From: Asterias rubens
Lineage: Eukaryota
NCBI RefSeq assembly: GCF_902459465.1
Contig: NC_047081.1
Location: forward strand, 11,036,001-11,100,000
DNA: 64,000 bases
Reading direction: 5' to 3'
Part shown: positions 51,916 through 64,000 of the stretch, piece by piece
Layout of the letters: every line of letters starts with the position of its first letter
Numbering within the stretch: position 1 is the first letter of the stretch
Notes under the pieces: model-generated
What the model was told of the DNA's origin: nothing
The model's input: only the letters and a program-made list of their open reading frames with translations
The model's database searches: none
Translations under genes and position numbers: made by a program

Positions 51916-53507
51916 GTTGTCTGACAGCTTGAGACGAGTAGTCCTGGTATAATAGGGTAGCGCAGCTGATGGGTATAGTAACACTGGGGGGTATACAGCA
52001 ATACTCTTAGCTGTACGATACAACAGCTGAAGGTGCAGCAATGGGTTCGACCTCGACACGTCACACTTGTTACAACGGTTCTAGCATAATTAAGGTAGCC
52101 CCACCCCCCCCCCCCCCAATATGCCCTGAGGGCAGGCTTGTTTGAGTGTGGTTCAATATTTAACAGACAATCATAGCATACAGTGCAAAATGCTAACAAA
52201 AACAGTTTTAGAAACTAATTTAGAAGTGTCACCTCTTTTTGCACTCAAAGCACTGTACTTTTTTTACCCACTTCTTAAAGTATGTGGGAGGTCCCAGTGC
52301 CCATTACTCTCCTTCCAAAAGGAAAAAATGTCCCTGTACCTCTAAGCAAAACAGACTATCTTGTTGAGCTCTCGAAATCGGTCTAATATCTCGAGGGCCT
52401 TTAAAAGAATTCAAAATTAGGCACTCTCGTTTTCTCCCTGTTTAGTGGGTGCACCCTTGGGCAACGCCCCGCCCCCCCCCCCCAATTGATGTAAGTGCCC
52501 CGCCCCAATTCGAAGGCTGGATTTTTGAGCTTGAATACCGTATTTGATCGAAAACGGCAACAAATTAGTGATCTTTGCTGAATCAATTCTCCGGTCCTTT
52601 TCATTTACCGTAATTTTCAGTAATTTCTGCATAGGCCTAATGAAATGTTGCACTCTCAGCATCGGTTTGTTTTGATTTGTAAATATAGTTATTTGTAAAG
52701 AAATCATCGTTTGTGGACAGTCAAGAAACTTCAATCAAGCAATCGATTTCAATCAGTCGATATGTCCACCAATCAATCAATCAAGCTGTGTGCTTTTATG
52801 CAACACTGCATCTATGAAGTTCCGTTAATTTCCAAGTCACTCCGTTCCGATTAACATACTGTTCTCAACAACATTGTTCGTTGCCCAATTAATTATTTGT
52901 TTTGTAAATTCTCTACATTTTGTGTATGATACCAAGATTGATAAAAAAGACAAAAGGAAAATCGACAAATCAATCCATCAACCGTAGTCTTCCAATCAAT
53001 TACTCAATTTGGTAAATGAATCTATACCAATAATTAATCACGAATCAATCTATTTATCCACCGACCCATCAATCAATATTTTATTCTCTATTCAATTAAC
53101 CAGTCACCGATCAAGTACTAAATCAATCGATAAACATACAAATCAGTTGAAAGATTTACAAAATTAAAATTAAAATGCATTCTTCTATGCAACATTCTTT
53201 CCTTAAATTAGAAGCAAAGAAATTGGAGAGAAAAAAGTCAGTGCACCACAAACAAAAATGAAATGATTTTGTTAAAATTATGTGCACAATCGCGGGAAAT
53301 CCTTTCAACTTTCTGGAAAAAAATGAACTAAAATACAATGTTCATATTTAGACATTTGAATATTATTTACATTTTTAAAGTATTTTGTTTCAGAATTCAG
53401 ATACAAGCATGCTATGATGAAACTTCAAAGTTAGTTTGCAAAATATTAAATTTTGGGATTTTCAGCGTATTTTTATGTTAACTTGGTTGATTTATGTTGT
53501 TTGTTAA

Positions 53508-54074
53508 AGTCACCTGGAAATATAAAAAAAATTCTTTCAAACATAAGAGTATAATGCTTACGAACAATAAAACAATTTTTTTAGTAATTGTTTGTCACGA
53601 TTTATATGTTTAAAAAATATATAAAGTTGTTTGGGGCTGACTCCGCCTACCCCTTTTGTGACGTCAATCGAGGCAGACTTTGCCTGCAATGCGTATAGTA
53701 AACCCACGTGCAAAGTACATGTACGTCCAAGTCGTGAGTTGGTACATTTCAAAAAGTGTTTTTCTGCGTTCAGCAGCAATACACCCGGTCGGCATTGCCG
53801 GAATTTTTTTTTTTTTTTGAAACGTACAAACTCACGATTTGGTCCGTACATGTACTTTGCAATTGTGTTTACTCTACGCATTACAGGCAAAGTGTGCCTC
53901 GATTGACGTCACGAACAGCGCACTTTCGGGTCGGGGTCTACTCTTACATTTGTAAATAACATAAGAACTGATTTTTTAAAACCTTAGTTAACTGTTTATT
54001 CACATTCCACTCATCAAAACACATATATTAGTGACAAAAGCTTTATTTTGAAAAAATACCACTTCCAGGTGACT
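53508..54074. mobile_element. TTAA-flanked non-autonomous DNA transposon
   Basis: TTAA|agtcacctggaa ... ttccaggtgact|TTAA; internal inverted gacgtcaatcgaggca / tgcctcgattgacgtc. Confidence 0.85.
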
Positions 54075-54394
54075 TTAAGCTTGACCTGGGATCGAGCATG
54101 ACATACCTGTAACAATCGGAGCCCATCCAACAGGTTGGAGTAACTTTAATACGTCTGCTCATCTATTAAAAGGTCATTGTTTTAAAATTACTTCTGCATA
54201 TTTTGAAGCTCCTGGTTAGTCCAGGATTATTTAACAATAGTGGTTTTCGACGCACTCGTTTGGCAAAAAGAAAACATTTATTTCGTAAGTGAAATATTTA
54301 TTTGTTGTTCTAAAACCGTCGTTTCCATTGAAAAACCTCACAGTCTATGGGGAACATTTGTAAGGGGTGCAAAAGACCAGAGTAAAGAACTTAA

Positions 54395-54778
54395 AGGAAC
54401 ATTACAGAATTTGTTTTTGCTGACAAAACAGTTGCTGCAGTGTAAGCACTTTATGTAAGCCACCATATAGCTCCATGCATAAACTGACAAACCTGTAGAA
54501 GTTTGAGATCGATCGGCCGTCTAGCTCACGAGAGAATAGTGAAAAACCGATTACATATTTTGCATTGCATCGATGCCAAATTAAAAATGAATAAAACGCT
54601 CACTGAGCGATAAACTCCAAACGCGAAGTTAGATTATTTATTTCTCATCAACTATGACATTTCAGACAGAAATTTTTCAAGGGATGTTTTCTACTGTCAT
54701 CATCATTAGACCGTGTAAGTTTTAAGTAAATCCGCGATCTTTACGAATTTTGTTCCTTACCAATTCTGTAACGTTCCT
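54395..54778. mobile_element. TTAA-flanked non-autonomous DNA transposon
   Basis: TTAA|aggaacattacagaatt ... aattctgtaacgttcct|gtaa. Confidence 0.7.
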
Positions 54779-55450
54779 GTAATATTATTAGCCCATGCCT
54801 GACTTAACTTCAACTTGCTTCCCCCTGCTAGTGGAATAACATGCTACAAAAACCACATGACTCACAGATTACAGAACTAGGTTTCATTCAGCTTAAACGC
54901 CACGTTATTTACATATTATACAAAAATTGAGGGAATTTTTTTAACTTTTTTACAGCGTTTTAGGTAGGACTTTTGAGGTGGCCAAGAATAGTTGAGGTGG
55001 CATTTTTGTTAAATCAGTTGATTTTCAACAGTAAATCTGAACGCCTTAAACAAACACTGGAAAGTAGGTTAGTATTTACAGTCTTAGCAAAAACCAGCCC
55101 ATCAAATTATGCAACCTTTATCCAGGCCTTCCAAAATTTTAAGATTAAGGATACATTTCAGTTTCAAGACTTATTGTCGGTTGGAGTGGAGCAAGAAACT
55201 TATTTTTGGCATCAGGCCTCGATTTCACAAAATACTGAGAATCTTCTTAAAGATGAGTTGTCATAATTGCCATAGTAATTTGTATAGTGACATCACAATT
55301 TACTTAGCAATGAAGACTTATACACAGTAAAGATCAATCTTAGCTCTTTGCGAAATCAATCCAAGGAAACCTTGAACATAATTAATTTCTTTGGAGCTTT
55401 CAAAGGGTGGAAAGTAGGGAAGATTTAAAGAAAGTTTTGTTAAAGTCTCC

Positions 55451-56965
55451 TCATTCAGTCATCTCCTCAAGCAACTGGCTGGCCTGAGCCGCTTCCTGTT
55501 CAACCGGTCTCCAAGATACTGGACGCTTTTTGTTCTTCTTCTCTCTGCGCATTGCTGCCCAAGCCCGCTTCCGCTCTGACCACTCCCCTTTCTTAATGAT
55601 CTGGCGTTTTTCTGACATCAAGCTGACAATCTTGTCCTGCAGATCTCCAATGTGCAAGTCGAGCTGCTCAGCTCGTTCGTGCCATTCCGATATCACAAGC
55701 TTCGTCTTCTCGCTTGTGATGAGGGCCACCTGTTCCTTCAAAGTATTCACCGTGATGTCAATTTCTGCCATGCGGTTTTCCCGCACCTTCTTTGTTTGAT
55801 GCTTCTCTCTTTTGAAACCACCTGGCTGGAACAACTTGCTTCTTGTTTGGTTACAGCGAGTGTACTTGTAGCCGCTGTAGTACAGCCTCTTCTGAGCTTC
55901 AGTGTAGAGCTCGCCTCTTTTATCTAACAGGTGGGGCTTCTCCAAAGCAACCCTGAATGCCATCTCGTTCATTTTAGTATGGTAGCTTGTTAGGTTCATA
56001 TTCCCGTTCCGACCGAATATCCTGGAGACCTTTTTCAGTTCTGCCAAATCAACTCCTGCCTCGTTTAAGTCTTCCAGGGGATTGTCCTCCACCAGGGTTC
56101 CCCGTTCAAGCAATACAAACTCCTGGTTGACAGCTTCATGGGTTGGAGAGGAAGCGGAAGTCAGCTCACGCCTCTCATCTTCGATCATGGTGTCCACAAG
56201 GGCTTCCAAATTAGCAACGACCTGGGAGGAGTCATCCGCCCTGTCATTTACCTGTTCGCTGGAACTTTGCTCTGGTGGTTGAGACCCTGGTTGGTCATCC
56301 TGTTGTGTCTCAGATGGACCAGCCTCATCGCAAGTTTGTGCACTTTGCGACTGCTCATTTGAAGTATTCTCTCTCACCACGACCACCTCAACTGCATGGA
56401 CTACTTTCGGTGTTTTGGCCACCCTTTTTGTTGAGTACTTGTAGCCGCTCTGAGTCAGTGCTTCACGGGACAATTTCAGCAGCTTTCCCTTGTCTTGAAG
56501 AAGCTCTGGATGTTCCAAAGCAATCTTGTGGGCCCACTCGTTGACTCCCTTGTGGTATTTGGAGACATTTTTCTTGAAGATTTGCGACGCAAGTTTCACT
56601 TCTTGGTTGGTCATACAAGTGCGCTTGTTGAAGAGTGAGGGATCGGCTCTCAACCTTCCGATCACTGTTGGAGATATGTCGTTGGGAGATGTTATCTCCG
56701 ACTTAATTGCTCTCTGTGGACTTCTGTAATGGAATTCATACTTTTCTTTGGCTACAACCTTGTGACCTTTGTCCACATCGACAAACTCCTCAAAGTCGTT
56801 AGAGTAGACCATGAAGCGGTCCAGGGTGGCATTGCCAACAGGGTACAACTTCTTGGCTTGTTCTTGGATGTCTTTGACATTCTTGACCTTCACTGCCTTC
56901 TTCAGCTTGTTTTGGTCATCGAGAAAGATGGAAACGAGAATCAAATGCTTTGCCATCTTTTGCAT
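55451..56965 (-). CDS. Uncharacterised 504-aa protein: ubiquitin/PB1-like N-terminus, two NAB NCD2-like repeats, coiled coil, basic tail
   Basis: Long uninterrupted ORF with a splice acceptor (ttatcacag|g) 7 nt before the ATG. It is clearly paralogous to 60147-61556, with conserved blocks and divergent linkers, which indicates purifying selection. Confidence 0.85.
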   Translation of the reverse strand: MQKMAKHLILVSIFLDDQNKLKKAVKVKNVKDIQEQAKKLYPVGNATLDRFMVYSNDFEEFVDVDKGHKVVAKEKYEFHYRSPQRAIKSEITSPNDISPTVIGRLRADPSLFNKRTCMTNQEVKLASQIFKKNVSKYHKGVNEWAHKIALEHPELLQDKGKLLKLSREALTQSGYKYSTKRVAKTPKVVHAVEVVVVRENTSNEQSQSAQTCDEAGPSETQQDDQPGSQPPEQSSSEQVNDRADDSSQVVANLEALVDTMIEDERRELTSASSPTHEAVNQEFVLLERGTLVEDNPLEDLNEAGVDLAELKKVSRIFGRNGNMNLTSYHTKMNEMAFRVALEKPHLLDKRGELYTEAQKRLYYSGYKYTRCNQTRSKLFQPGGFKREKHQTKKVRENRMAEIDITVNTLKEQVALITSEKTKLVISEWHERAEQLDLHIGDLQDKIVSLMSEKRQIIKKGEWSERKRAWAAMRREKKNKKRPVSWRPVEQEAAQASQLLEEMTE

Positions 56966-57093
56966 GTAATTCCTGTGATAAACAAATAATTATAAAATTA
57001 ATGGGGGGGTTTTTGGTCAAAGGACGAAACTATTCAAACATGGAGGAAGGCAGACACTGACACAGCAATCAGTGACCCCCCTCCCCCCCCCCC

Positions 57094-57126
<33 letters not shown>

Positions 57127-58080
57127 CAATTATCCAGAACAAAATGGATACACCAATTGATGGCCATCATGCATGCCATCAATTGATGTCTTTACTCAAT
57201 TAAGTTTCAAAATTAATACTTCATAAAAACTTGAATTGTTCATAACGTGGCATAGCTTATATAACAAAATGTGGATTATATAAGCCTTTCTTGCATCGCA
57301 TTAATATAATGGCAGAAAAAATACCGAAGTTGCAAAGTCTTTTTTATTTACTAACAATTTTAACACTAACATTCAATAAAACAACAAGTGTTCAATTGCA
57401 ATAAAAAAAATCTCCTTTTGGCTTAAACTTTACAGCATGAAATTCAGTGCTGCAGCTGTTGTATAAAACTGAACCACTAACACAGTGGACTGGAGACGAG
57501 TCGAGTACCGTCAAAAAATACAGTGGTACACTGGTGGTAGTGCAGTCAATTTCATAAAAATTGTGGCGATCCAAAATTGTCATAAAAAAGTGTTGTGAAT
57601 GTGATAACAAATTAAGTTGACAATGAAAATGTATATTTCCCCTACTTTTAATCAAAAAAGAAAATTGCTGAAGCTTTTGACAAGTTTCTCTTCCTGTCGA
57701 CAACCATGGTCCAGAAAAGTTTTTAATAATTATTTATAATAAATAAACCAACACATCTATTAATTTCAAACATGCTGTAATTTGTAAAATGTAATTCAAA
57801 TATTAATGAGTCAAACATGTCCGGAGCTGGATCTGCAAGCAATCTTCAAATGTCTTAAATCTTATCTTGAAATCGGTCATAAATTTGGCTTTTTAAAAAC
57901 TTATATCATTTGTTCGTTGATTGAGTAGAAAACCGTGATAAACTTCTTCTCGCATGGATCAAAGAACAACTCAACACTAAAACTTTATTACTCAAAAGGC
58001 CGCATTTGAACCAAAACGTACGACATTTGTTTCCATGTGTTGTGATTGACGCACCTTTGCCCCGTCTTTGCTATAGCATG

Positions 58081-58320
58081 ACCGTCATTGGGTCACATTT
58101 TGCGTCATTTTATGGACGCCATCTTTCCAAAGAAAAAATACAGGTTTAGAATGAAGAAAACGAGATAGAAAACGAACAGAAAGTATCTATGCCTCGCCGC
58201 ATTTACCTACCTGTAATACACACTCTTAACAGAAAAGCCTTTTCGTCAAATAAGTGCCTCAAAAAACGTTAAATTGCGAGAAAACCAAAACCTTTTCAAA
58301 CGTCATTGGGACTCAAAGCA
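58081..58320 (-). promoter_or_regulatory. Putative promoter / first non-coding exon of the 504-aa gene
   Basis: Minus-strand CCAAT boxes (~58305, ~58088), a YY1-type AAGATGGCG (58117-58125) and a donor-like tacag|gtaggt at 58211/58210. The paralog has a similar tacag|gtaaat at 62495/62494. Confidence 0.3.
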
Positions 58321-60146
58321 TGGTACCTGACTTTCTGTGCGTTGATAATACATTTGAAGTCAGGGATGTAGACTAGTATTAATATCAGACGATAGAGGTC
58401 GCTATTTATCATTCACTGTATTTTTTAGGGGTTACGTGTAGGGGGAGGATGTACATGTTAATGTTTCTGTATAAAATAGTAATGCTGCATGGAGGAAGGA
58501 TGAAGTCAGGTTTGTTAGGGAAATGAACTTTGATCCTTTTTTTTTGGGGGGGGGGGGCACCCACAAACCTTCCCTATCCCTGCCATATTGGGTACGGTAT
58601 GATGTTAGAAGTTTTGAATCAAGCATTTTTTTTTAGATGGCCAGAGTTTGAAGCTTGGGTTATTAGTCTTGTGAACCTAATTAATAACTAGACAGTTCAA
58701 TTAGACATGGGTGCAGGGGATTTAGCTCTATAGTACAGGACAACAAAGCATTTCCAGAAAACCAAGCCCCCCCCCCCCCCTTAGTTGATTATCAAATAAT
58801 TTGTTTACATTATTTTTTAAAGTGAGGTCAGAGACTTGTAACTTGTCCCGACTTTCAAGACTTCATTATCTCTTGGGAACATGAGTGCACAAAATTCAAT
58901 TCATTCTTGATGAATTAGAATCTCAATGATAATTTATAAAATAAGGACTTTCTTCTAAGACGAAGTTAGAGAATTTAAATTTCTTCCCCATTTTCATAAG
59001 GACTTTATCTATTGGAACTCCCCCCGCCCCCCCCCCCCCAAAAAAAAAAAGCCCTTACCCCTCCCTGACAAAAGGAAGAAAAAAATCACACATTAGACAA
59101 GAATCATGACAAGGAAACTACATGTACTTTAGAATCTTTAAATGTATTTCTACATTCTAAAACGTCAAACAGTCAACTCTGATCTGGTCTGTGCATTGCT
59201 TTCTTTTGACAAAATCTACAAAGTTTTCACCTACGAAATGTTTAACTTTGAAAGGCAAAGCATACCTTTGGTTTTTGAAAACGTTCAATTGTTGTGATCT
59301 TATATATAAATGCAAAATAATGTACAGTTAAACTAACATATAAAAAATCATTTCAAAGGATGGTCGCGGAGAAAATTAGGTAGAAAGAAAATCTCTTTTA
59401 GGAATAACCAATCTGAGTGTGAGAAATGTTAGCGCGGTAGCGCTTCTTATAAATAATAGTGTCAGGCACAAAAAGTGCAAGACGAGGCCAAGTCTGGTGG
59501 TCTTGTTTTTTTCTCTTCAATTCAACATCTTTGTCTCAAAATAATGATGTTCAAATGTTGAGTTTGAGTCTCACAAATATCTTTCAATCCTGCTGAGTAC
59601 TGCCTTAAAACAGAAAACATCAATCTTATCTTGTTCAAATAAAACAGTGACGATAATAAAACTGTTTTATCATTTTGATTCTATTCTCTTCTAATTTTGA
59701 TTTCGGTCTTGTAAATAAGATCACGATCCAGTAAAGATTCTGAGTTACAAGTCCTGTGGTCTTGTGGATTTGGATTCCCCTTTGAGAAGTTCAAGCCCTA
59801 AATAAATTTAATTTGTATGCATATTTAATTGTATACTTTCTTTTTACAGGGATAAAGAAAATTACTTTGGTTTCATCACCCTTACACATAATTATTATGT
59901 GTACGTGTATTTGATAAGCAATTACTCATTACTTTCCCCGAGTTCTGTGAACAAAAATCACCGGCATATTACTCGGTTGGGATTCATTCAAAATTCTTAT
60001 CTTATTAGTAACGTTGATATCAAAATGTTGCTCTTGTTTTAGTGAACGTACTGAGGCACTGATGTGACAAAGGGTCTAGAGAATTATGAGTCTCAGGTGG
60101 TCAAGAAACTTCATCGCTCACACAATGTCATGTAAAACCCAAGATG

Positions 60147-61556
60147 TCAGGTTTCCGATAGGGTTTCCGAGTCACCTTGTTCTGCAGCAATGCTCCTCGG
60201 GCGCTTCCATTTCTCCCTGTACTGGAGTTCCCAAGCCCACCTCCGTTTCATCGCTTCACCTTTCTTGGTATGACCGCGTTTTTCCCCCTCCAAAACGACA
60301 ATCTTTTCCTGCAGCTCGTCGATCTGCTTGTTGAACTGCTCCGCTCGGTCCTGCCACTCGACCTTTGACCTCTCAGCGGTGATGAGTGCCACCTGCTCTT
60401 TCAGAATGGTCACCTTAACTTCGATATCTGCGATGCGATTCGCTCGCTCTTTCTTTGACATTGTCTTGTTATCCTTCTCGATGCCGCCACCCGGTAGGAA
60501 CAACTTGCTTCTTGTTTGGTTAGATCGGGTGTACCTGTAGCCGCTGTAGTACAGCCTCTTCTGAGCCTCTCGAAAGAGCTTGCCTCTTTCACCCAACAAG
60601 CTCGGATCCTCCAAGGCGGCCTTGAATGCCATCTCGTTCATTGCAAGTTGGTAGCTGGTCATTTGAAAACTCTTCTCCCGTCCGAATACCATGGTGGCCT
60701 TTCTCAGTGCTGCCATATCGGCACTTTCCATAATCGGGTCTGCCTGGGGATAGCATTGCTGGGTAACACTTCTTTGGATTGGAGGAGAGATCAAGGTAGC
60801 ACTTAACTTGCGTCTCTCATCTGCGACCAGTGTGTTCACGACGGCTTCTTCCGTTTTGGAAGAGTCAACACTCTGATCATTAGTCAAGTCACTTAGATTT
60901 TCCTGCGGTGTTTCTGACCCTTCTTGGTCGTTTACAGGTTGAGCCTCCGATTCCTCTGTCAGATAATAAGTTTGTAAACAGTACGAGTGCTCGCTTAGAG
61001 TATTATCTCTTGGAATCATTTCAACTTTTATATTTGCTTTTGTCTTGCTTCTTCTTGCATATTTATAACCACTCAGAGCAAGTGCCTCATTTGCCAACTT
61101 TATCAGCTTGTCCCTGTTCTTAAGAACCTGTGGATGTTCAACAGCAATGTTGCTGGCAAACTTGTTGATGCCTCTGCGGTACTTTGTGAGATTTTTCTTG
61201 TAGATTTGTGCTGCTTCCATTATTTCTTGCTTGGTCATACTCTCAACTGGTTTGGGAGGAGCGCTACTACTACCTGGTGCACCCTCAAGTTCAGGCGCTG
61301 ATGATTTTTTGTTTAGACTTTTAAAATGGAGTTGATACTTTTCCTTGGCCTCTACTCTGTGGCTGTTGTCTACGTCAACATACTCTTCAAAGTCCTTACA
61401 GTAGACCATGAAGCGCTCTAAGTAGGCTCCTCCAACAGGGTACATGGTCCTCGCTTGGTCTTGGATTTCTCTGACATTTTTGACGCTTGTCTTTTTCTTC
61501 AGCTTGTTTTCATCATCCATAAAGATGGAAACGAGAATCAGATGTTTTGCCATCAT
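60147..61556 (-). CDS. Uncharacterised ~469-aa paralog with the same architecture plus an EHSY HCF-1-binding-type motif
   Basis: Uninterrupted ORF with acceptor ctttcctttctgcag|g at 61564/61563, in the same phase as its paralog. The first true ATG is at 61556 (the ORF track starts at a TTG at 61559). Confidence 0.85.
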   Translation of the reverse strand: MMAKHLILVSIFMDDENKLKKKTSVKNVREIQDQARTMYPVGGAYLERFMVYCKDFEEYVDVDNSHRVEAKEKYQLHFKSLNKKSSAPELEGAPGSSSAPPKPVESMTKQEIMEAAQIYKKNLTKYRRGINKFASNIAVEHPQVLKNRDKLIKLANEALALSGYKYARRSKTKANIKVEMIPRDNTLSEHSYCLQTYYLTEESEAQPVNDQEGSETPQENLSDLTNDQSVDSSKTEEAVVNTLVADERRKLSATLISPPIQRSVTQQCYPQADPIMESADMAALRKATMVFGREKSFQMTSYQLAMNEMAFKAALEDPSLLGERGKLFREAQKRLYYSGYRYTRSNQTRSKLFLPGGGIEKDNKTMSKKERANRIADIEVKVTILKEQVALITAERSKVEWQDRAEQFNKQIDELQEKIVVLEGEKRGHTKKGEAMKRRWAWELQYREKWKRPRSIAAEQGDSETLSET

Positions 61557-62060
61557 CAAACACCTGCAGAAAGGAAAGCGAGAGAAATAAATTTGAAACC
61601 AAAAGCCGTTGTTTTATTATTGCACGTATCAGTTGCAGCCAGTAAAAGAAAACTAACATCACGACTGAGAACGAATGGTTGGACTTTTGTACAAGAACTC
61701 AGTTATTCAATTTCAAAACCTTTATTAATTCATATTAATTATTTCAAACTATTAAAATATTGTCAGTGTACAGAACTGGAATGGAACAAAAGTACATTGG
61801 CTAAGCAAACAAAGTTCCTGTGGGTGGCCTGATTTAAAAGTCCTGTATATTTCTACTATTTATTACTAAGTACCAAAATCCAAAACATGTCATTCGATTT
61901 TCACTTGTTTTACTGGCTTCCTTTAATTTATAATTATGATTATTTGACATGTTTGTTGAAGTTGAACGTCTTTTCATGTAAATTTTGGCAGGATCAAAAT
62001 ATAAGTTCAAATCAAAGTGTCGAATGTAATAATAAATAATATAATAATATTAAAAATACT

Positions 62061-62191
62061 GGAAAAGTTTCCGTATGGCGCCACCACTTTTTCATTCGAT
62101 ATTAAATAATATAGTATCAATGTCCAATAATGAGATATCCCTTTTTGTAAAAATGAGTGAAAAGGTGGTGGCGCCATACGGAAAGTTATCC
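62061..62191. mobile_element. 131-bp MITE with a perfect 8-bp TSD (aaaatact)
   Basis: aaaatact|ggaaaagtttccgtatggcgccacc...ggtggcgccatacggaaagttatcc|aaaatact. Confidence 0.92.
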
Positions 62192-63754
62192 AAAATACTA
62201 TTTGTAAAAAGTATGGAAGGCCCATACATACTGCCAAATACGCTGGATTCCCTCAAGAAACGGTCTTCTTTGATTTTTGTAAACTTATAATATTAGTTGA
62301 GTGCTGAGACAGTGTGAGCACTGCTTCCACGAAATTGCATTGCAAATGCAAGTTCGTCGTTCCACTTTCACCGATGCGATAGCTAGCGGAACGAACCTTT
62401 TCCATATGCAAAGTTCTAGGACCGTGTGGGTATGTTTGCCCGATCATGGGGACTTGCAATTGCAACTAACAAATAATTCGCAATAATTATTTACCTGTAG
62501 ATTAAAATCTCCAAGAAAAACGTTTTTTTTTTCACAACAAACGAAGCGCAACCATCATTCGAACTCTTTCTCAACTTTCGCATGAAACCTCTTCAGCTGC
62601 CCCTGACTATTTTGCTTTGCGCGTGTATTACAACAATGAAGTCTGGGGTATATACAATAGTTTTTATCAAACAACAGAGGTCGCTATTTTTTGTTAGCGA
62701 CTGTTTAGCTGTTGCTGGCCGCATTATGATGTTCGTTGGCCAAGTGACGAGGCACGTCTTTGCCCGACATTTCTTCCTCCATGATTTCCATCAGTGTCGT
62801 TTGAAGGATGAAAAGGGAATTTACATTTGTTTAGCTTTGATGTCAAGCTCTTACCATCGGACAAAATTGATCAAAATTCAATCAGTTGATGTTAATTAAC
62901 CGTCAACAAGACACAAGCCGGGACAAAATGATCCCCATGACACTGGCGGCCCCGCGATGTGCAGCAATTTTTGTTTGTGAACTTCAAAACGGCCACTGTC
63001 GTAGTGCTTTTCAATGCGGAAATGTTTTTTCAAAATTGATTTGAAAAGCAAATCCTTAAACAACATCAGGAACATTTTTTAGGGTGGCAATTTTGATGAA
63101 CAGAAAAACAAATTCCTGGCGGGCAGCAGGGGGAGACCCCCCTTATATTATTTAATATTTAGGGCGCCCTCTTGAAAACTTTCATAGCCCGCGGGATCAA
63201 CTATCTATGCACAGGCGTAAACGTCACACAAAACAAAGACAATTGAAACACCATCCCCCCCAAAATTAACATTAAAGATATGTTTTTTGTAATAAAATAT
63301 TAATTTTTTATTGCCTCTAGATTTAATTTCAGGCAATATTTTTTATTTATTAAAACAACAACCCCTCGTCCCAACAAAATCACAACTACACTTTTTTTTT
63401 AATTACAAGAAAACTGTTTAAAATATAATGGGCATTAAGCGAGGAGACTCCTGAAGACGATCATATAGCATACTAATCGAATGGTTGAGTTGTCAACCGA
63501 CGGTTCTTTTTTAGAACACTAAAATATATTGGTGCTAATACTTGGTCCTATCGCAACCTCACTAAACTATCCACGTTACAAAATGTATAACCCCAATCAT
63601 GAGACTTTTTGTTCAATACTGATCAATTCTTTCGAACGGGTCCTTTGCAGGGGACAGTCAGAAAAGAGCAGATACTGATCCCTGTATCCCCGTTCTCAAA
63701 AAAACTATATTCTGTTGAGAGTTCTGTAGTAAAAAGTTGCAGTTTGAAGACCAG

Positions 63755-63925
63755 GGGTGGATTTCTCAAAGGTAGTCCTAACTTAGGACTAGTCCTAGGC
63801 AATGCTAAGAGATAGGACTGGTCCTAAGTTAGGATGAGTTACTGGTCCTAACTTAGGACCAGTCCTATCTATTAGCATTGCCTAGGACTAGTCCTAAGTT
63901 AGGACTACCTTTGTGAAATCCACCC
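63755..63925. mobile_element. Near-perfect palindromic PIF/Harbinger-like MITE with a CAG TSD
   Basis: cag|gggtggatttctcaaaggtagtcctaacttaggact...agtcctaagttaggactacctttgtgaaatccaccc|cag. Confidence 0.88.
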
Positions 63926-64000
63926 CAGCAGAAGTGGCTGTTATCAGATCCCTTATAAGGAACTAAAGACTGTCTTCTTCACCAAGATGTCACTGGGCGA

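What the first reader, a model, noticed from the sequence alone, without database searches (positions are those of the whole stretch)
55451..61563. Undescribed gene pair with tandem NAB-type NCD2 repression domains outside a NAB protein
Seen: two paralogs, each with an internally repeated ~65-aa module. In the 504-aa protein these are aa 118-181 (nt 56614-56423) and aa 306-377 (nt 56050-55835): ELKKVSRIFGR..NLTSYHTKMNEMAFRVALEKPHLLDKRGELYTEAQKRLYYSGYKYTRCNQTRSK. Known, from memory: the C-terminal half of NAB1 NCD2 (Pfam PF04905) reads EIRKYSAIYGRFD...[53 protein letters not shown]. The pattern E-x-K-x-S-x-I-[YF]-G-R...LT...NE-x-A...LL-x-x-R-x-EL...YKYT...T-x-SK is shared. NAB proteins are EGR corepressors with one NCD1 and one NCD2. 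These proteins lack NCD1 and instead have a different N-terminal domain, two NCD2-like units, a coiled coil and a basic NLS-like tail. Inference: a new family of nuclear co-regulators, or a source or offshoot of the NCD2 fold.
Basis: partly seen in the sequence, partly recalled or inferred. Interest (0 to 1): 0.85.

Follow-up and report, generated by a model that had tools for sequence, protein, structure and literature searches.

The report
Sea-star proteins with NAB-like repressor modules
Two neighbouring, transcribed sea-star genes encode proteins that join a ubiquitin-like domain to two copies of the C-terminal half of the NAB corepressor's NCD2 domain and a coiled coil; this domain arrangement does not appear in the literature searched, but it is a variant of a widespread and little-studied protein family.

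Summary
Two paralogs lie on the minus strand: G1 (55451-56965, 504 aa) and G2 (60147-61556, 469 aa from its ATG). They are 48% identical. Both pass Pfam's NCD2 gathering threshold (38.9 and 34.6 bits; cut-off 25), each with two internal modules.

Only the C-terminal half of NCD2 (profile positions ~52-124 of 125) is present. A profile of the family matches the solved NAB1 NCD2 structure 2YUF at E 3.6e-9. There is no NCD1. The N-terminus is a confidently modelled beta-grasp (ubiquitin-like) domain with no Pfam family. The C-terminus is a helical hairpin that aligns with the region following NCD2 in true NABs.

Both genes are transcribed. G1 has a spliced 5'UTR intron and is under strong purifying selection (dN/dS 0.086 against Asterias amurensis).

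The genes belong to a broad "NCD2-C module + coiled coil" superfamily:
- true NABs, with a SAM-type NCD1;
- Mucoromycota fungal proteins, with the same SAM-type NCD1;
- sponge and other proteins with no N-terminal domain;
- an echinoderm beta-grasp subfamily (Patiria, Lytechinus) with one module.

The double-module form was found only in Asterias-type sequences. UniProt already auto-names relatives "NAB co-repressor domain-containing protein", but I found no paper describing them. A role as nuclear, self-associating co-repressors is inferred, not shown. I rate it a new variant of a known kind, of moderate interest.

The parts
55451..56965 (-). G1 coding exon (504 aa, single coding exon)
   Evidence: ORF. 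Covered by RNA contigs and reads in four runs. The ortholog in A. amurensis gives dN/dS 0.086.
56711..56956 (-). G1 N-terminal beta-grasp (ubiquitin-like) domain, aa 4-85
   Evidence: AF2 gives a strand-strand-helix-strand-strand-strand order with pLDDT 93-97. VIA Z is 7-8.4 to USP4/11/15 UBL, CIDE-N, PB1 and UBX domains. Foldseek hits SATB ULD, DIX and PB1 domains. There is no Pfam hit.
56423..56620 (-). G1 NCD2-C-like module a, aa 116-181
   Evidence: Pfam NCD2 E 4e-4, profile positions 74-123. Own HMM E 1e-38. Three helices with pLDDT above 90.
56081..56422 (-). G1 acidic, Ser/Gln-rich disordered linker with one conserved amphipathic helix (aa 246-269)
   Evidence: pLDDT is below 50 except for the helix at 246-269. 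Residues E254, A255, V257, E264 and L268 are invariant in the three double-module proteins.
55835..56080 (-). G1 NCD2-C-like module b with the SGY-Y...RSK motif, aa 296-377
   Evidence: Pfam NCD2 E 2.9e-5, profile positions 54-122. It aligns to 2yuf_A residues 66-133. pLDDT is 90-97.
55526..55834 (-). G1 basic linker plus antiparallel helical hairpin (coiled coil), aa 378-480, including the basic patch KKNKKRP
   Evidence: AF2 helices 392-425 and 429-480 with pLDDT 96-98. hhalign to the post-NCD2 region of true NABs gives probability 86.6% and E 4e-6. VIA finds only generic helical hairpins, Z 10-11.
56972..58209 (-). G1 5'UTR intron (GT-AG); the 5'UTR exon begins at about 58210
   Evidence: Nine spliced reads in run X14. 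Donor is CAG|GTAGGT; the acceptor has a polypyrimidine tract and CAG, 6 nt before the ATG.
60147..61556 (-). G2 coding exon (469 aa from the ATG at 61556)
   Evidence: ORF. An acceptor-like CTGCAG lies just 5' of the ATG. RNA contigs and reads cover it.
61305..61553 (-). G2 beta-grasp domain
   Evidence: Own HMM E 2e-51. It aligns with the G1 domain.
61035..61244 (-). G2 NCD2-C-like module a
   Evidence: Pfam NCD2 E 5e-4. Own HMM E 2e-37.
60507..60728 (-). G2 NCD2-C-like module b
   Evidence: Pfam NCD2 E 2.6e-4, profile positions 52-124. Own HMM E 2e-36.
60210..60476 (-). G2 coiled-coil hairpin
   Evidence: It aligns with the G1 hairpin.
59136..60146 (-). G2 3'UTR (about 1 kb), containing an interspersed repeat near 59923-59985
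   Evidence: RNA contigs run from the CDS down to about 59136. Depth is very high, with many loose ends, at 59923-59986.

Best explanation
G1 and G2 are a tandem pair of functional, transcribed host genes in a sea star of the genus Asterias or a very close relative. They belong to an echinoderm subfamily of a much larger and older superfamily.

The superfamily's common unit is a cassette with four parts:
- a three-helix module homologous to the C-terminal half of NAB NCD2, with the signature IFG+...LT.Y...N..A..L...P.LL..RG.L...A...L..SGY.Y....RSK;
- a short basic, NLS-like linker;
- an antiparallel coiled-coil hairpin;
- a basic tail.

True NABs and a Mucoromycota fungal group place a SAM-type NCD1 domain in front of this cassette. 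The echinoderm subfamily places a beta-grasp (ubiquitin-like) domain there instead. In the Asterias-type proteins a second NCD2-C module and an acidic linker sit between the beta-grasp domain and the cassette.

Inferred mechanism (not shown): these are nuclear proteins that do not bind DNA. The coiled coil, and probably the beta-grasp domain, make them self-associate or bind partners. The beta-grasp domain carries a conserved KK pair and a conserved acidic cluster (DFEEF.DVD), as polymerising PB1, DIX and CIDE-N domains do. The NCD2-C/coiled-coil cassette would deliver the still undefined repressive activity of NAB NCD2 to a partner transcription factor other than EGR, since the EGR-binding NCD1 is missing.
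For: Shown:
- Pfam NCD2 is hit above the gathering threshold in both proteins, with two modules each.
- A profile of the 11 echinoderm beta-grasp-family proteins matches the solved NAB1 NCD2 chain 2yuf_A at E 3.6e-9. A profile of 23 mostly non-NAB cassette proteins matches it at E 9e-12.
- A search of 1.84 billion representatives gave 276 relatives at E<=1e-3. Of the best 150, 135 match NCD2 and 15 match SAM_NCD1.
- Architectures: beta-grasp + two modules occurs only in G1, G2, P0002 and their orthologs. Beta-grasp + one module occurs in Patiria miniata, Lytechinus variegatus and others.
- The cassette after the module aligns by eye across NABs, fungal proteins and non-NAB animal proteins, including echinoderm members. 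hhalign between the hairpin of the echinoderm family and the post-NCD2 region of true NABs gives probability 86.6%, E 4e-6, 68 columns.
- Foldseek against AlphaFold DB clusters aligns G1 307-488 to entries named NGFI-A-binding 1-like and NAB co-repressor domain-containing protein.
- The AF2 model with 150 sequences has all four folded parts at pLDDT above 90.
- The beta-grasp fold is supported.
- Expression: both ORFs are covered in four RNA runs, while the 2 kb between them (57000-59000) has essentially no depth (two isolated bins in one run). Nine spliced reads define the G1 5'UTR intron.
- Constraint: dN/dS between G1 orthologs is 0.086 at dS 0.064.

Background from papers:
- NCD1 is the Egr-1 interaction domain and NCD2 the transcriptional-regulation domain (PMC2768752).
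- NCD1 is a SAM-like domain (PMC3053371).
Against: - No localisation, binding or repression data exist for any member of this subfamily.
- Only half of NCD2 is present, and I could not establish which half of NCD2 carries NAB's repression activity. The primary papers were not held.
- The structural comparison with 2YUF never surfaced in the fold searches, because the module is small within a 504-residue model.
- The beta-grasp domain could not be assigned to a polymerising subclass. It has no Pfam hit, and VIA Z of 7-8 matches many ubiquitin-like domains equally well.
- The hhalign match between coiled coils may be inflated by composition.
- G2 is less constrained (dN/dS 0.27), and its A. amurensis ortholog carries a frameshifting 10-nt deletion in the assembly.
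Confidence: 0.6

Rival explanations
1. The proteins modulate or act as decoys for canonical NAB. They would heteromerise with the animal's own NAB through the shared NCD2-C/coiled-coil cassette, and so titrate or redirect NAB-EGR repression rather than act as independent co-repressors.
For: The cassette is collinear with the region of true NABs that includes and follows NCD2. Echinoderms do have canonical NABs: Diadema setosum P0291, and the crinoids P0133 and P0286, all with full NCD1 and NCD2.
Against: There is no evidence that the NAB cassette mediates NAB-NAB contacts. The modules of NABs and of this family sit in separate, well-supported clades with long branches between them. That argues for long independent evolution rather than co-evolving partners.
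Confidence: 0.15
2. These are scaffold proteins unrelated to transcription, for example cytoplasmic or cytoskeletal adaptors. The NCD2-C three-helix module would be a generic protein-binding unit, and the link to repression would be specific to NAB.
For: The repressive mechanism of NCD2 is undefined. The hairpin resembles only generic helical hairpins such as ESCRT-III and BBSome chains. Beta-grasp domains occur in many non-nuclear contexts.
Against: Basic NLS-like patches flank the hairpin in nearly all members. Language-model neighbours of the cassette are mostly transcriptional co-repressors (NAB, ETO NHR2, SAP130, NCoR2), but their scores are only leads. The beta-grasp neighbours include nuclear regulators such as SATB ULD, TDP-43 N-terminal domain and GRHL1 C-terminal domain.
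Confidence: 0.2
3. These are copies derived from retrogenes or mobile elements, with no host function or a decaying one.
For: Each gene has a single coding exon. The Patiria relative is a single exon nested inside an intron of a short-chain dehydrogenase gene. The A. amurensis G2 ortholog has a frameshift in the assembly.
Against: G1 is under strong purifying selection, dN/dS 0.086. Both genes are transcribed, and G1 has a spliced 5'UTR intron; G2 has a matching splice-acceptor-like site just upstream of its ATG. The window holds no terminal repeats framing the genes and no further ORF of 150 aa or more within 10 kb of them. It has only two copies. The A. amurensis locus keeps the same GST and acyl-CoA dehydrogenase neighbours.
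Confidence: 0.04

Closest known systems
NAB1/NAB2 (NGFI-A-binding) EGR corepressors; Pfam NCD2 PF04905; solved NAB1 NCD2 structure PDB 2YUF
   Same: They share the three-helix C-terminal half of NCD2. In invertebrate NABs the basic linker and coiled coil that follow it are also shared.
   Different: G1 and G2 have no NCD1/SAM domain and no N-terminal half of NCD2. They have a beta-grasp domain instead, and the module is present twice. NAB modules form their own clade with 99/97 support.
Single-module echinoderm proteins: Patiria miniata XP_038051512.1 (UniRef name 'NAB co-repressor domain-containing protein') and Lytechinus variegatus XP_041459980.1
   Same: They have the same beta-grasp domain, NCD2-C module, RSK motif, hairpin and basic tail, and align along their whole length.
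   Different: They have one module only, and lack module a and the acidic linker with its helix. They form a separate clade with 97/97 support. The Patiria gene lies in a different genomic context.
Mucoromycota proteins with SAM_NCD1 + NCD2-C + coiled coil (Phascolomyces articulosus KAI9249174.1, Cunninghamella echinulata CAO3638863.1)
   Same: They share the NCD2-C module and a following coiled coil that ends in a basic ...ERKHQWY... motif.
   Different: Their N-terminal domain is SAM-type NCD1, which passes the Pfam cut-off. They have a single module and are fungal.
Oligomerising beta-grasp domains: SATB1/2 ULD, Dishevelled/SOSEKI DIX, NBR1/TFG PB1, CIDE-N
   Same: The fold and size of the N-terminal domain match. 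The domain also has a conserved basic pair and a conserved acidic cluster in its sequence.
   Different: There is no sequence-profile membership in any of them. Ordinary UBL domains match equally well.

Membership tests
NAB (NGFI-A-binding) corepressor family | N-terminal NCD1 (SAM_NCD1, PF04904), the EGR-binding domain | tested here: not met
   G1, G2 and their N-terminal pieces give no PF04904 hit at E<=10. The N-terminus folds as a beta-grasp domain. True NABs score 147-156 bits.
NAB (NGFI-A-binding) corepressor family | Full-length NCD2 (PF04905, 125 profile positions) | tested here: not met
   Only profile positions ~52-124 are matched in every module. True NABs match positions 2-125 at 160-175 bits.
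NAB (NGFI-A-binding) corepressor family | Binds EGR-family factors and represses their targets | not testable with these tools
   This needs binding and reporter assays.
Pfam NCD2 (PF04905) domain family | Whole-protein score at or above the curated gathering cut-off (25 bits) | tested here: met
   G1 scores 38.9 bits and G2 34.6 bits. Single modules alone score 20.5-24.5 bits, just under the cut-off.
Pfam NCD2 (PF04905) domain family | Sequence-profile match to an experimentally solved NCD2 (2YUF, NAB1) | tested here: met
   The echinoderm family profile A7 matches 2yuf_A at E 3.6e-9, chain residues 60-132. G1 alone gives only E 0.69.
Pfam NCD2 (PF04905) domain family | Three-dimensional superposition on 2YUF | tested here: inconclusive
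   2YUF did not appear among the listed matches in Foldseek pdb, pdb_via or pdb_via_wide, which were dominated by the beta-grasp domain and the hairpin. AlphaFold DB clusters did align G1 307-488 to NAB-named models.
NCD2-C + coiled-coil cassette superfamily (unnamed) | Module followed by an RSK motif, a basic linker and a helical hairpin collinear with other members | tested here: met
   Alignments A4 and A7; hhalign of the hairpin against NABs, probability 86.6%; AF2 hairpin pLDDT 96-98.
Beta-grasp (ubiquitin-like) fold | Strand-strand-helix-strand-strand-strand topology superposing on solved ubiquitin-like domains | tested here: met
   DSSP element order. VIA Z 7-8.4, rmsd 2.2-3.0 over 70-83 residues. 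These Z values are in the range the tool calls common, so the fold assignment is sound but no subfamily can be assigned.
PB1 / DIX / CIDE-N polymerising beta-grasp domains | Profile membership, and a head-to-tail interface between basic and acidic faces | tested here: inconclusive
   There is no Pfam hit in 10 family members. K22 and K23 are nearly invariant and D63 is invariant across the 11 echinoderm-family proteins, and the whole DFEE..DVD cluster (D57-D65) is invariant in the three double-module proteins. Their positions on opposite faces were not checked.

The most novel reading that the evidence does not exclude
The C-terminal half of NCD2 plus its helical hairpin is an autonomous, ancient opisthokont co-repressor cassette. 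It has been fitted in different lineages with different self-associating N-terminal domains: SAM in NABs and Mucoromycota, and a previously uncatalogued PB1/DIX-like beta-grasp domain in echinoderms. The Asterias pair would be polymerising co-repressors with doubled effector modules, acting on transcription factors other than EGR. That would make them a natural dissection of the still unexplained NCD2 repression mechanism.
Probability: 0.3. Interest if true: 0.65.

Novelty: new variant of a known kind. Interest (0 to 1): 0.48.

Why it matters
NCD2 is one of the repression domains of NAB1 and NAB2. These proteins matter for myelination, and for solitary fibrous tumours through the NAB2-STAT6 fusion. 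How NCD2 works is not stated in any of the papers I could read.

This locus and its relatives show that 'NCD2' is composite. Its C-terminal three-helix half travels with a coiled-coil hairpin as a separate evolutionary unit. That unit occurs without NCD1 in many animals and, together with a SAM-type NCD1, in early-diverging fungi.

This gives a minimal unit to test for repression and partner binding. It also suggests that NAB-like architecture predates animals. The echinoderm beta-grasp domain is a domain family with no Pfam model.

Tried and rejected
- The word-index homolog search with G1 returned only itself and one relative, because the candidate list saturated. The exhaustive HMM search was needed.
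- The first AF2 run, with 3 sequences, was poor (pLDDT 57). It was repeated with 150 sequences.
- Foldseek against PDB, pdb_via and pdb_via_wide did not bring up 2YUF. They returned only beta-grasp domains or generic helical hairpins.
- The top VIA hit, to a CNOT3 helical hairpin (Z 8.6), was judged generic.
- ESM Atlas structure hits to chordate 'SAMD3-like' and unnamed clusters (TM 0.24-0.26) could not be followed up, because their sequences are not retrievable.
- One cluster look-up of ten cassette proteins returned no names, so the taxonomy of most non-echinoderm cassette proteins is unknown. The exceptions are one sponge, Dysidea avara, and the fungi.
- The primary NAB papers (Swirnoff 1998, Svaren 1998) are not held. 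I therefore could not learn which part of NCD2 is sufficient for repression, or whether the NAB hairpin equals the CHD4-interacting domain.
- Pseudogene and mobile-element readings were rejected on expression, splicing, selection and conserved neighbours.
- Rfam found nothing in 53000-64000.
Full report
**What is there.** The window is animal DNA at about 40% G+C. Two long ORFs lie 3.2 kb apart on the minus strand: G1 at 55451-56965 (504 aa) and G2 at 60147-61559. They are 48% identical over their whole length, E 7e-141. G1 is in the same 90%-identity cluster as XP_071808679.1, 'uncharacterized protein [Asterias amurensis]', which differs from it at six residues. The A. amurensis locus CP134972.1 is about 98% identical in DNA and has the same GST and acyl-CoA dehydrogenase neighbours. 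The window therefore comes from an Asterias sea star or a very close relative.

- Pfam NCD2 (PF04905) is hit above its curated cut-off by both proteins: 38.9 and 34.6 bits against 25, with two stretches each.
- Scanned separately, the four modules each match NCD2 at E 3e-5 to 5e-4. The match is always to profile positions ~52-124 of 125, the C-terminal half.
- The two modules of G1 are 41% identical to each other, E 9e-14.
- PDB holds a solved NAB1 NCD2 structure, 2YUF.
- A profile of the 11 echinoderm relatives matches 2yuf_A residues 60-132 at E 3.6e-9.
- A profile of 23 mostly non-NAB relatives matches it at E 9e-12.

**Architecture.** With a 150-sequence alignment, AlphaFold2 gives a mean pLDDT of 77.6, with four folded parts above 90.
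- Residues 7-81 have a strand-strand-helix-strand-strand-strand order.
- Residues 120-172 form three helices (module a).
- Residues 307-363 form three helices (module b), preceded by short helices.
- Helices 392-425 and 429-480 form a hairpin.
- Between the modules lies an acidic, Ser/Gln-rich disordered stretch with one conserved helix (246-269).

The N-terminal domain is a beta-grasp (ubiquitin-like) fold:
- Foldseek against AlphaFold Swiss-Prot returns SATB1/2 ULD, Dishevelled DIX, SOSEKI, NBR1/TFG PB1 and DDI1/DSK2 UBL domains.
- VIA-align gives Z 7-8.4 at rmsd 2.2-3.0 over 70-83 residues to USP4/11/15 UBL, CIDE-N, PB1, UBX and SUMO domains.
- No Pfam model matches this domain in ten family members, so it is an uncatalogued beta-grasp family.
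- Its conserved residues include the basic pair K22/K23 and D63 across the echinoderm family, and the acidic cluster D57-D65 in the three double-module proteins.

The hairpin resembles only generic helical hairpins.

**The wider family.** A profile search of 1.84 billion representative proteins found 276 relatives at E<=1e-3. Of the best 150, 135 match NCD2 and only 15 match NCD1. My own domain HMMs sort them as follows.
- Beta-grasp + two modules occurs only in G1, G2, P0002 and their orthologs.
- Beta-grasp + one module occurs in P0006 and P0008-P0013. These include Patiria miniata XP_038051512.1, which UniRef names 'NAB co-repressor domain-containing protein', and Lytechinus variegatus XP_041459980.1.
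- The rest have the module alone or with other N-termini.

Three other groups stand out:
- Mucoromycota proteins (Phascolomyces, Cunninghamella) pass Pfam's cut-off for SAM_NCD1 and carry the NCD2 C-terminal half plus a coiled coil.
- A sponge protein from Dysidea avara carries the cassette without an N-terminal domain.
- True NABs with full NCD1 and NCD2 exist in echinoderms: Diadema, Anneissia and Antedon.

What follows the module is conserved across all these groups: an RSK motif, a basic KR-rich linker and a coiled coil that ends in a basic patch. Profile-profile comparison of the echinoderm hairpin with the post-NCD2 region of true NABs gives 86.6% probability, E 4e-6, over 68 columns. 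Foldseek against AlphaFold DB clusters aligns G1 307-488 with NAB-named models.

In a maximum-likelihood tree of modules, five groups are separate, well-supported clades: the a-modules, the b-modules (with P0006), the single-module echinoderm group, the NABs and the fungal proteins. The deeper order is unresolved. The Asterias proteins are therefore not recent NAB derivatives, and the origin of module a remains open.

**The genes are real.**
- In two RNA assemblies of the same species and in raw RNA reads of the sister species, both ORFs are covered, while 57000-59000 between them has essentially no depth apart from two isolated bins in one run. The signal is transcript, not DNA carry-over.
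- Nine spliced reads define a GT-AG intron at 56972-58209 in the G1 5'UTR, ending 6 nt before the ATG.
- G2 has a matching acceptor sequence just before its ATG at 61556.
- G1 against its A. amurensis ortholog gives dS 0.064, dN 0.0055 and dN/dS 0.086.
- G2 is looser at 0.27. In the A. amurensis assembly its ortholog carries a 10-nt deletion at window positions 60520-60530, inside the RSK motif, which shifts the frame, and an in-frame 9-nt insertion. The RNA reads neither confirmed nor excluded this deletion.
- The paralogs are old, with dS 0.89.
- The window holds only these two copies. It has no repeats framing them and no transposase-like ORFs.

**How it probably works.** The function is inferred from three points.
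- In NAB, NCD1 binds EGR and is SAM-like, NCD2 is the transcriptional-regulation domain, and a further C-terminal domain recruits CHD4/NuRD (PMC2768752, PMC3053371, PMC11554739).
- G1 and G2 keep the NCD2 C-terminal half and the hairpin, have basic NLS-like patches, and replace the SAM domain with a beta-grasp domain of the size and charge pattern seen in polymerising PB1, DIX and CIDE-N domains.
- The most likely reading is therefore a nuclear, self-associating co-regulator that carries NCD2-type effector modules to a partner other than EGR.

No localisation, binding or repression data exist. I could not find which part of NCD2 suffices for repression, because the primary papers are not held.

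**Novelty.** Full-text searches found no paper on NCD2 modules outside NAB proteins. Automatic annotation, however, already labels relatives with the NAB domain. This is a new variant of a known kind, a new domain architecture within the NCD2 family.

Noticed in passing
proteins P0018, P0019, P0028 (Mucoromycota; not in the window): Early-diverging fungi (Phascolomyces articulosus, Cunninghamella echinulata) encode proteins that pass Pfam's cut-off for the NAB-specific SAM_NCD1 domain and also carry the NCD2 C-terminal half and a coiled coil. They form one well-supported clade. NAB-like architecture may therefore predate animals.
   Followed up: partly
L002:6257 (A. amurensis CP134972.1), equivalent to window 60520-60530: The G2 ortholog in the A. 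amurensis assembly lacks 10 nt inside the YT-RSN-QTRSK motif. This shifts the frame, so the ORF ends after 378 aa. A 9-nt in-frame insertion lies near the C-terminus. It may be real decay, a polymorphism or an assembly error.
   Followed up: partly
window 59923-59986: A short stretch in the G2 3'UTR has RNA depth 50-100 times that of its surroundings, and many reads run on into unrelated sequence. It looks like an interspersed repeat expressed from many loci. Rfam finds nothing there.
   Followed up: partly
window 63754-63926: A near-perfect palindrome: two 86-nt arms, 95% complementary, separated by 1 nt.
   Followed up: no
window 53655-53915 and 62060-62192: Two further inverted-repeat pairs flank the gene pair: 71-nt arms at 90% with a 119-nt spacer, and 50-nt arms at 82% with a 33-nt spacer. 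They may be MITE-like elements.
   Followed up: no
window 55818-56082 versus 60487-60751: Between the paralogs, the module b region has a lower synonymous distance (dS 0.45) than the other regions (0.76-1.13). This could reflect past gene conversion or codon constraint.
   Followed up: partly
L001:9920-11011 (Patiria miniata JADOBP010000009.1): The single-module Patiria relative is a single coding exon nested, on the same strand, inside an intron of a short-chain dehydrogenase gene next to V-ATPase subunit H. There is no synteny with the Asterias locus.
   Followed up: partly
alignment A7, columns ~290-330 (P0009-P0014): The single-module echinoderm proteins share a conserved motif (QSTL.F..GKLKIS.E.P) between the beta-grasp domain and the module. 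The Asterias double-module proteins lack it.
   Followed up: no
alignment A4, C-termini: Many short cassette-only proteins from unnamed animal assemblies end in a conserved aromatic C-terminal motif (..HF / ..NFL / ..HFQ).
   Followed up: no
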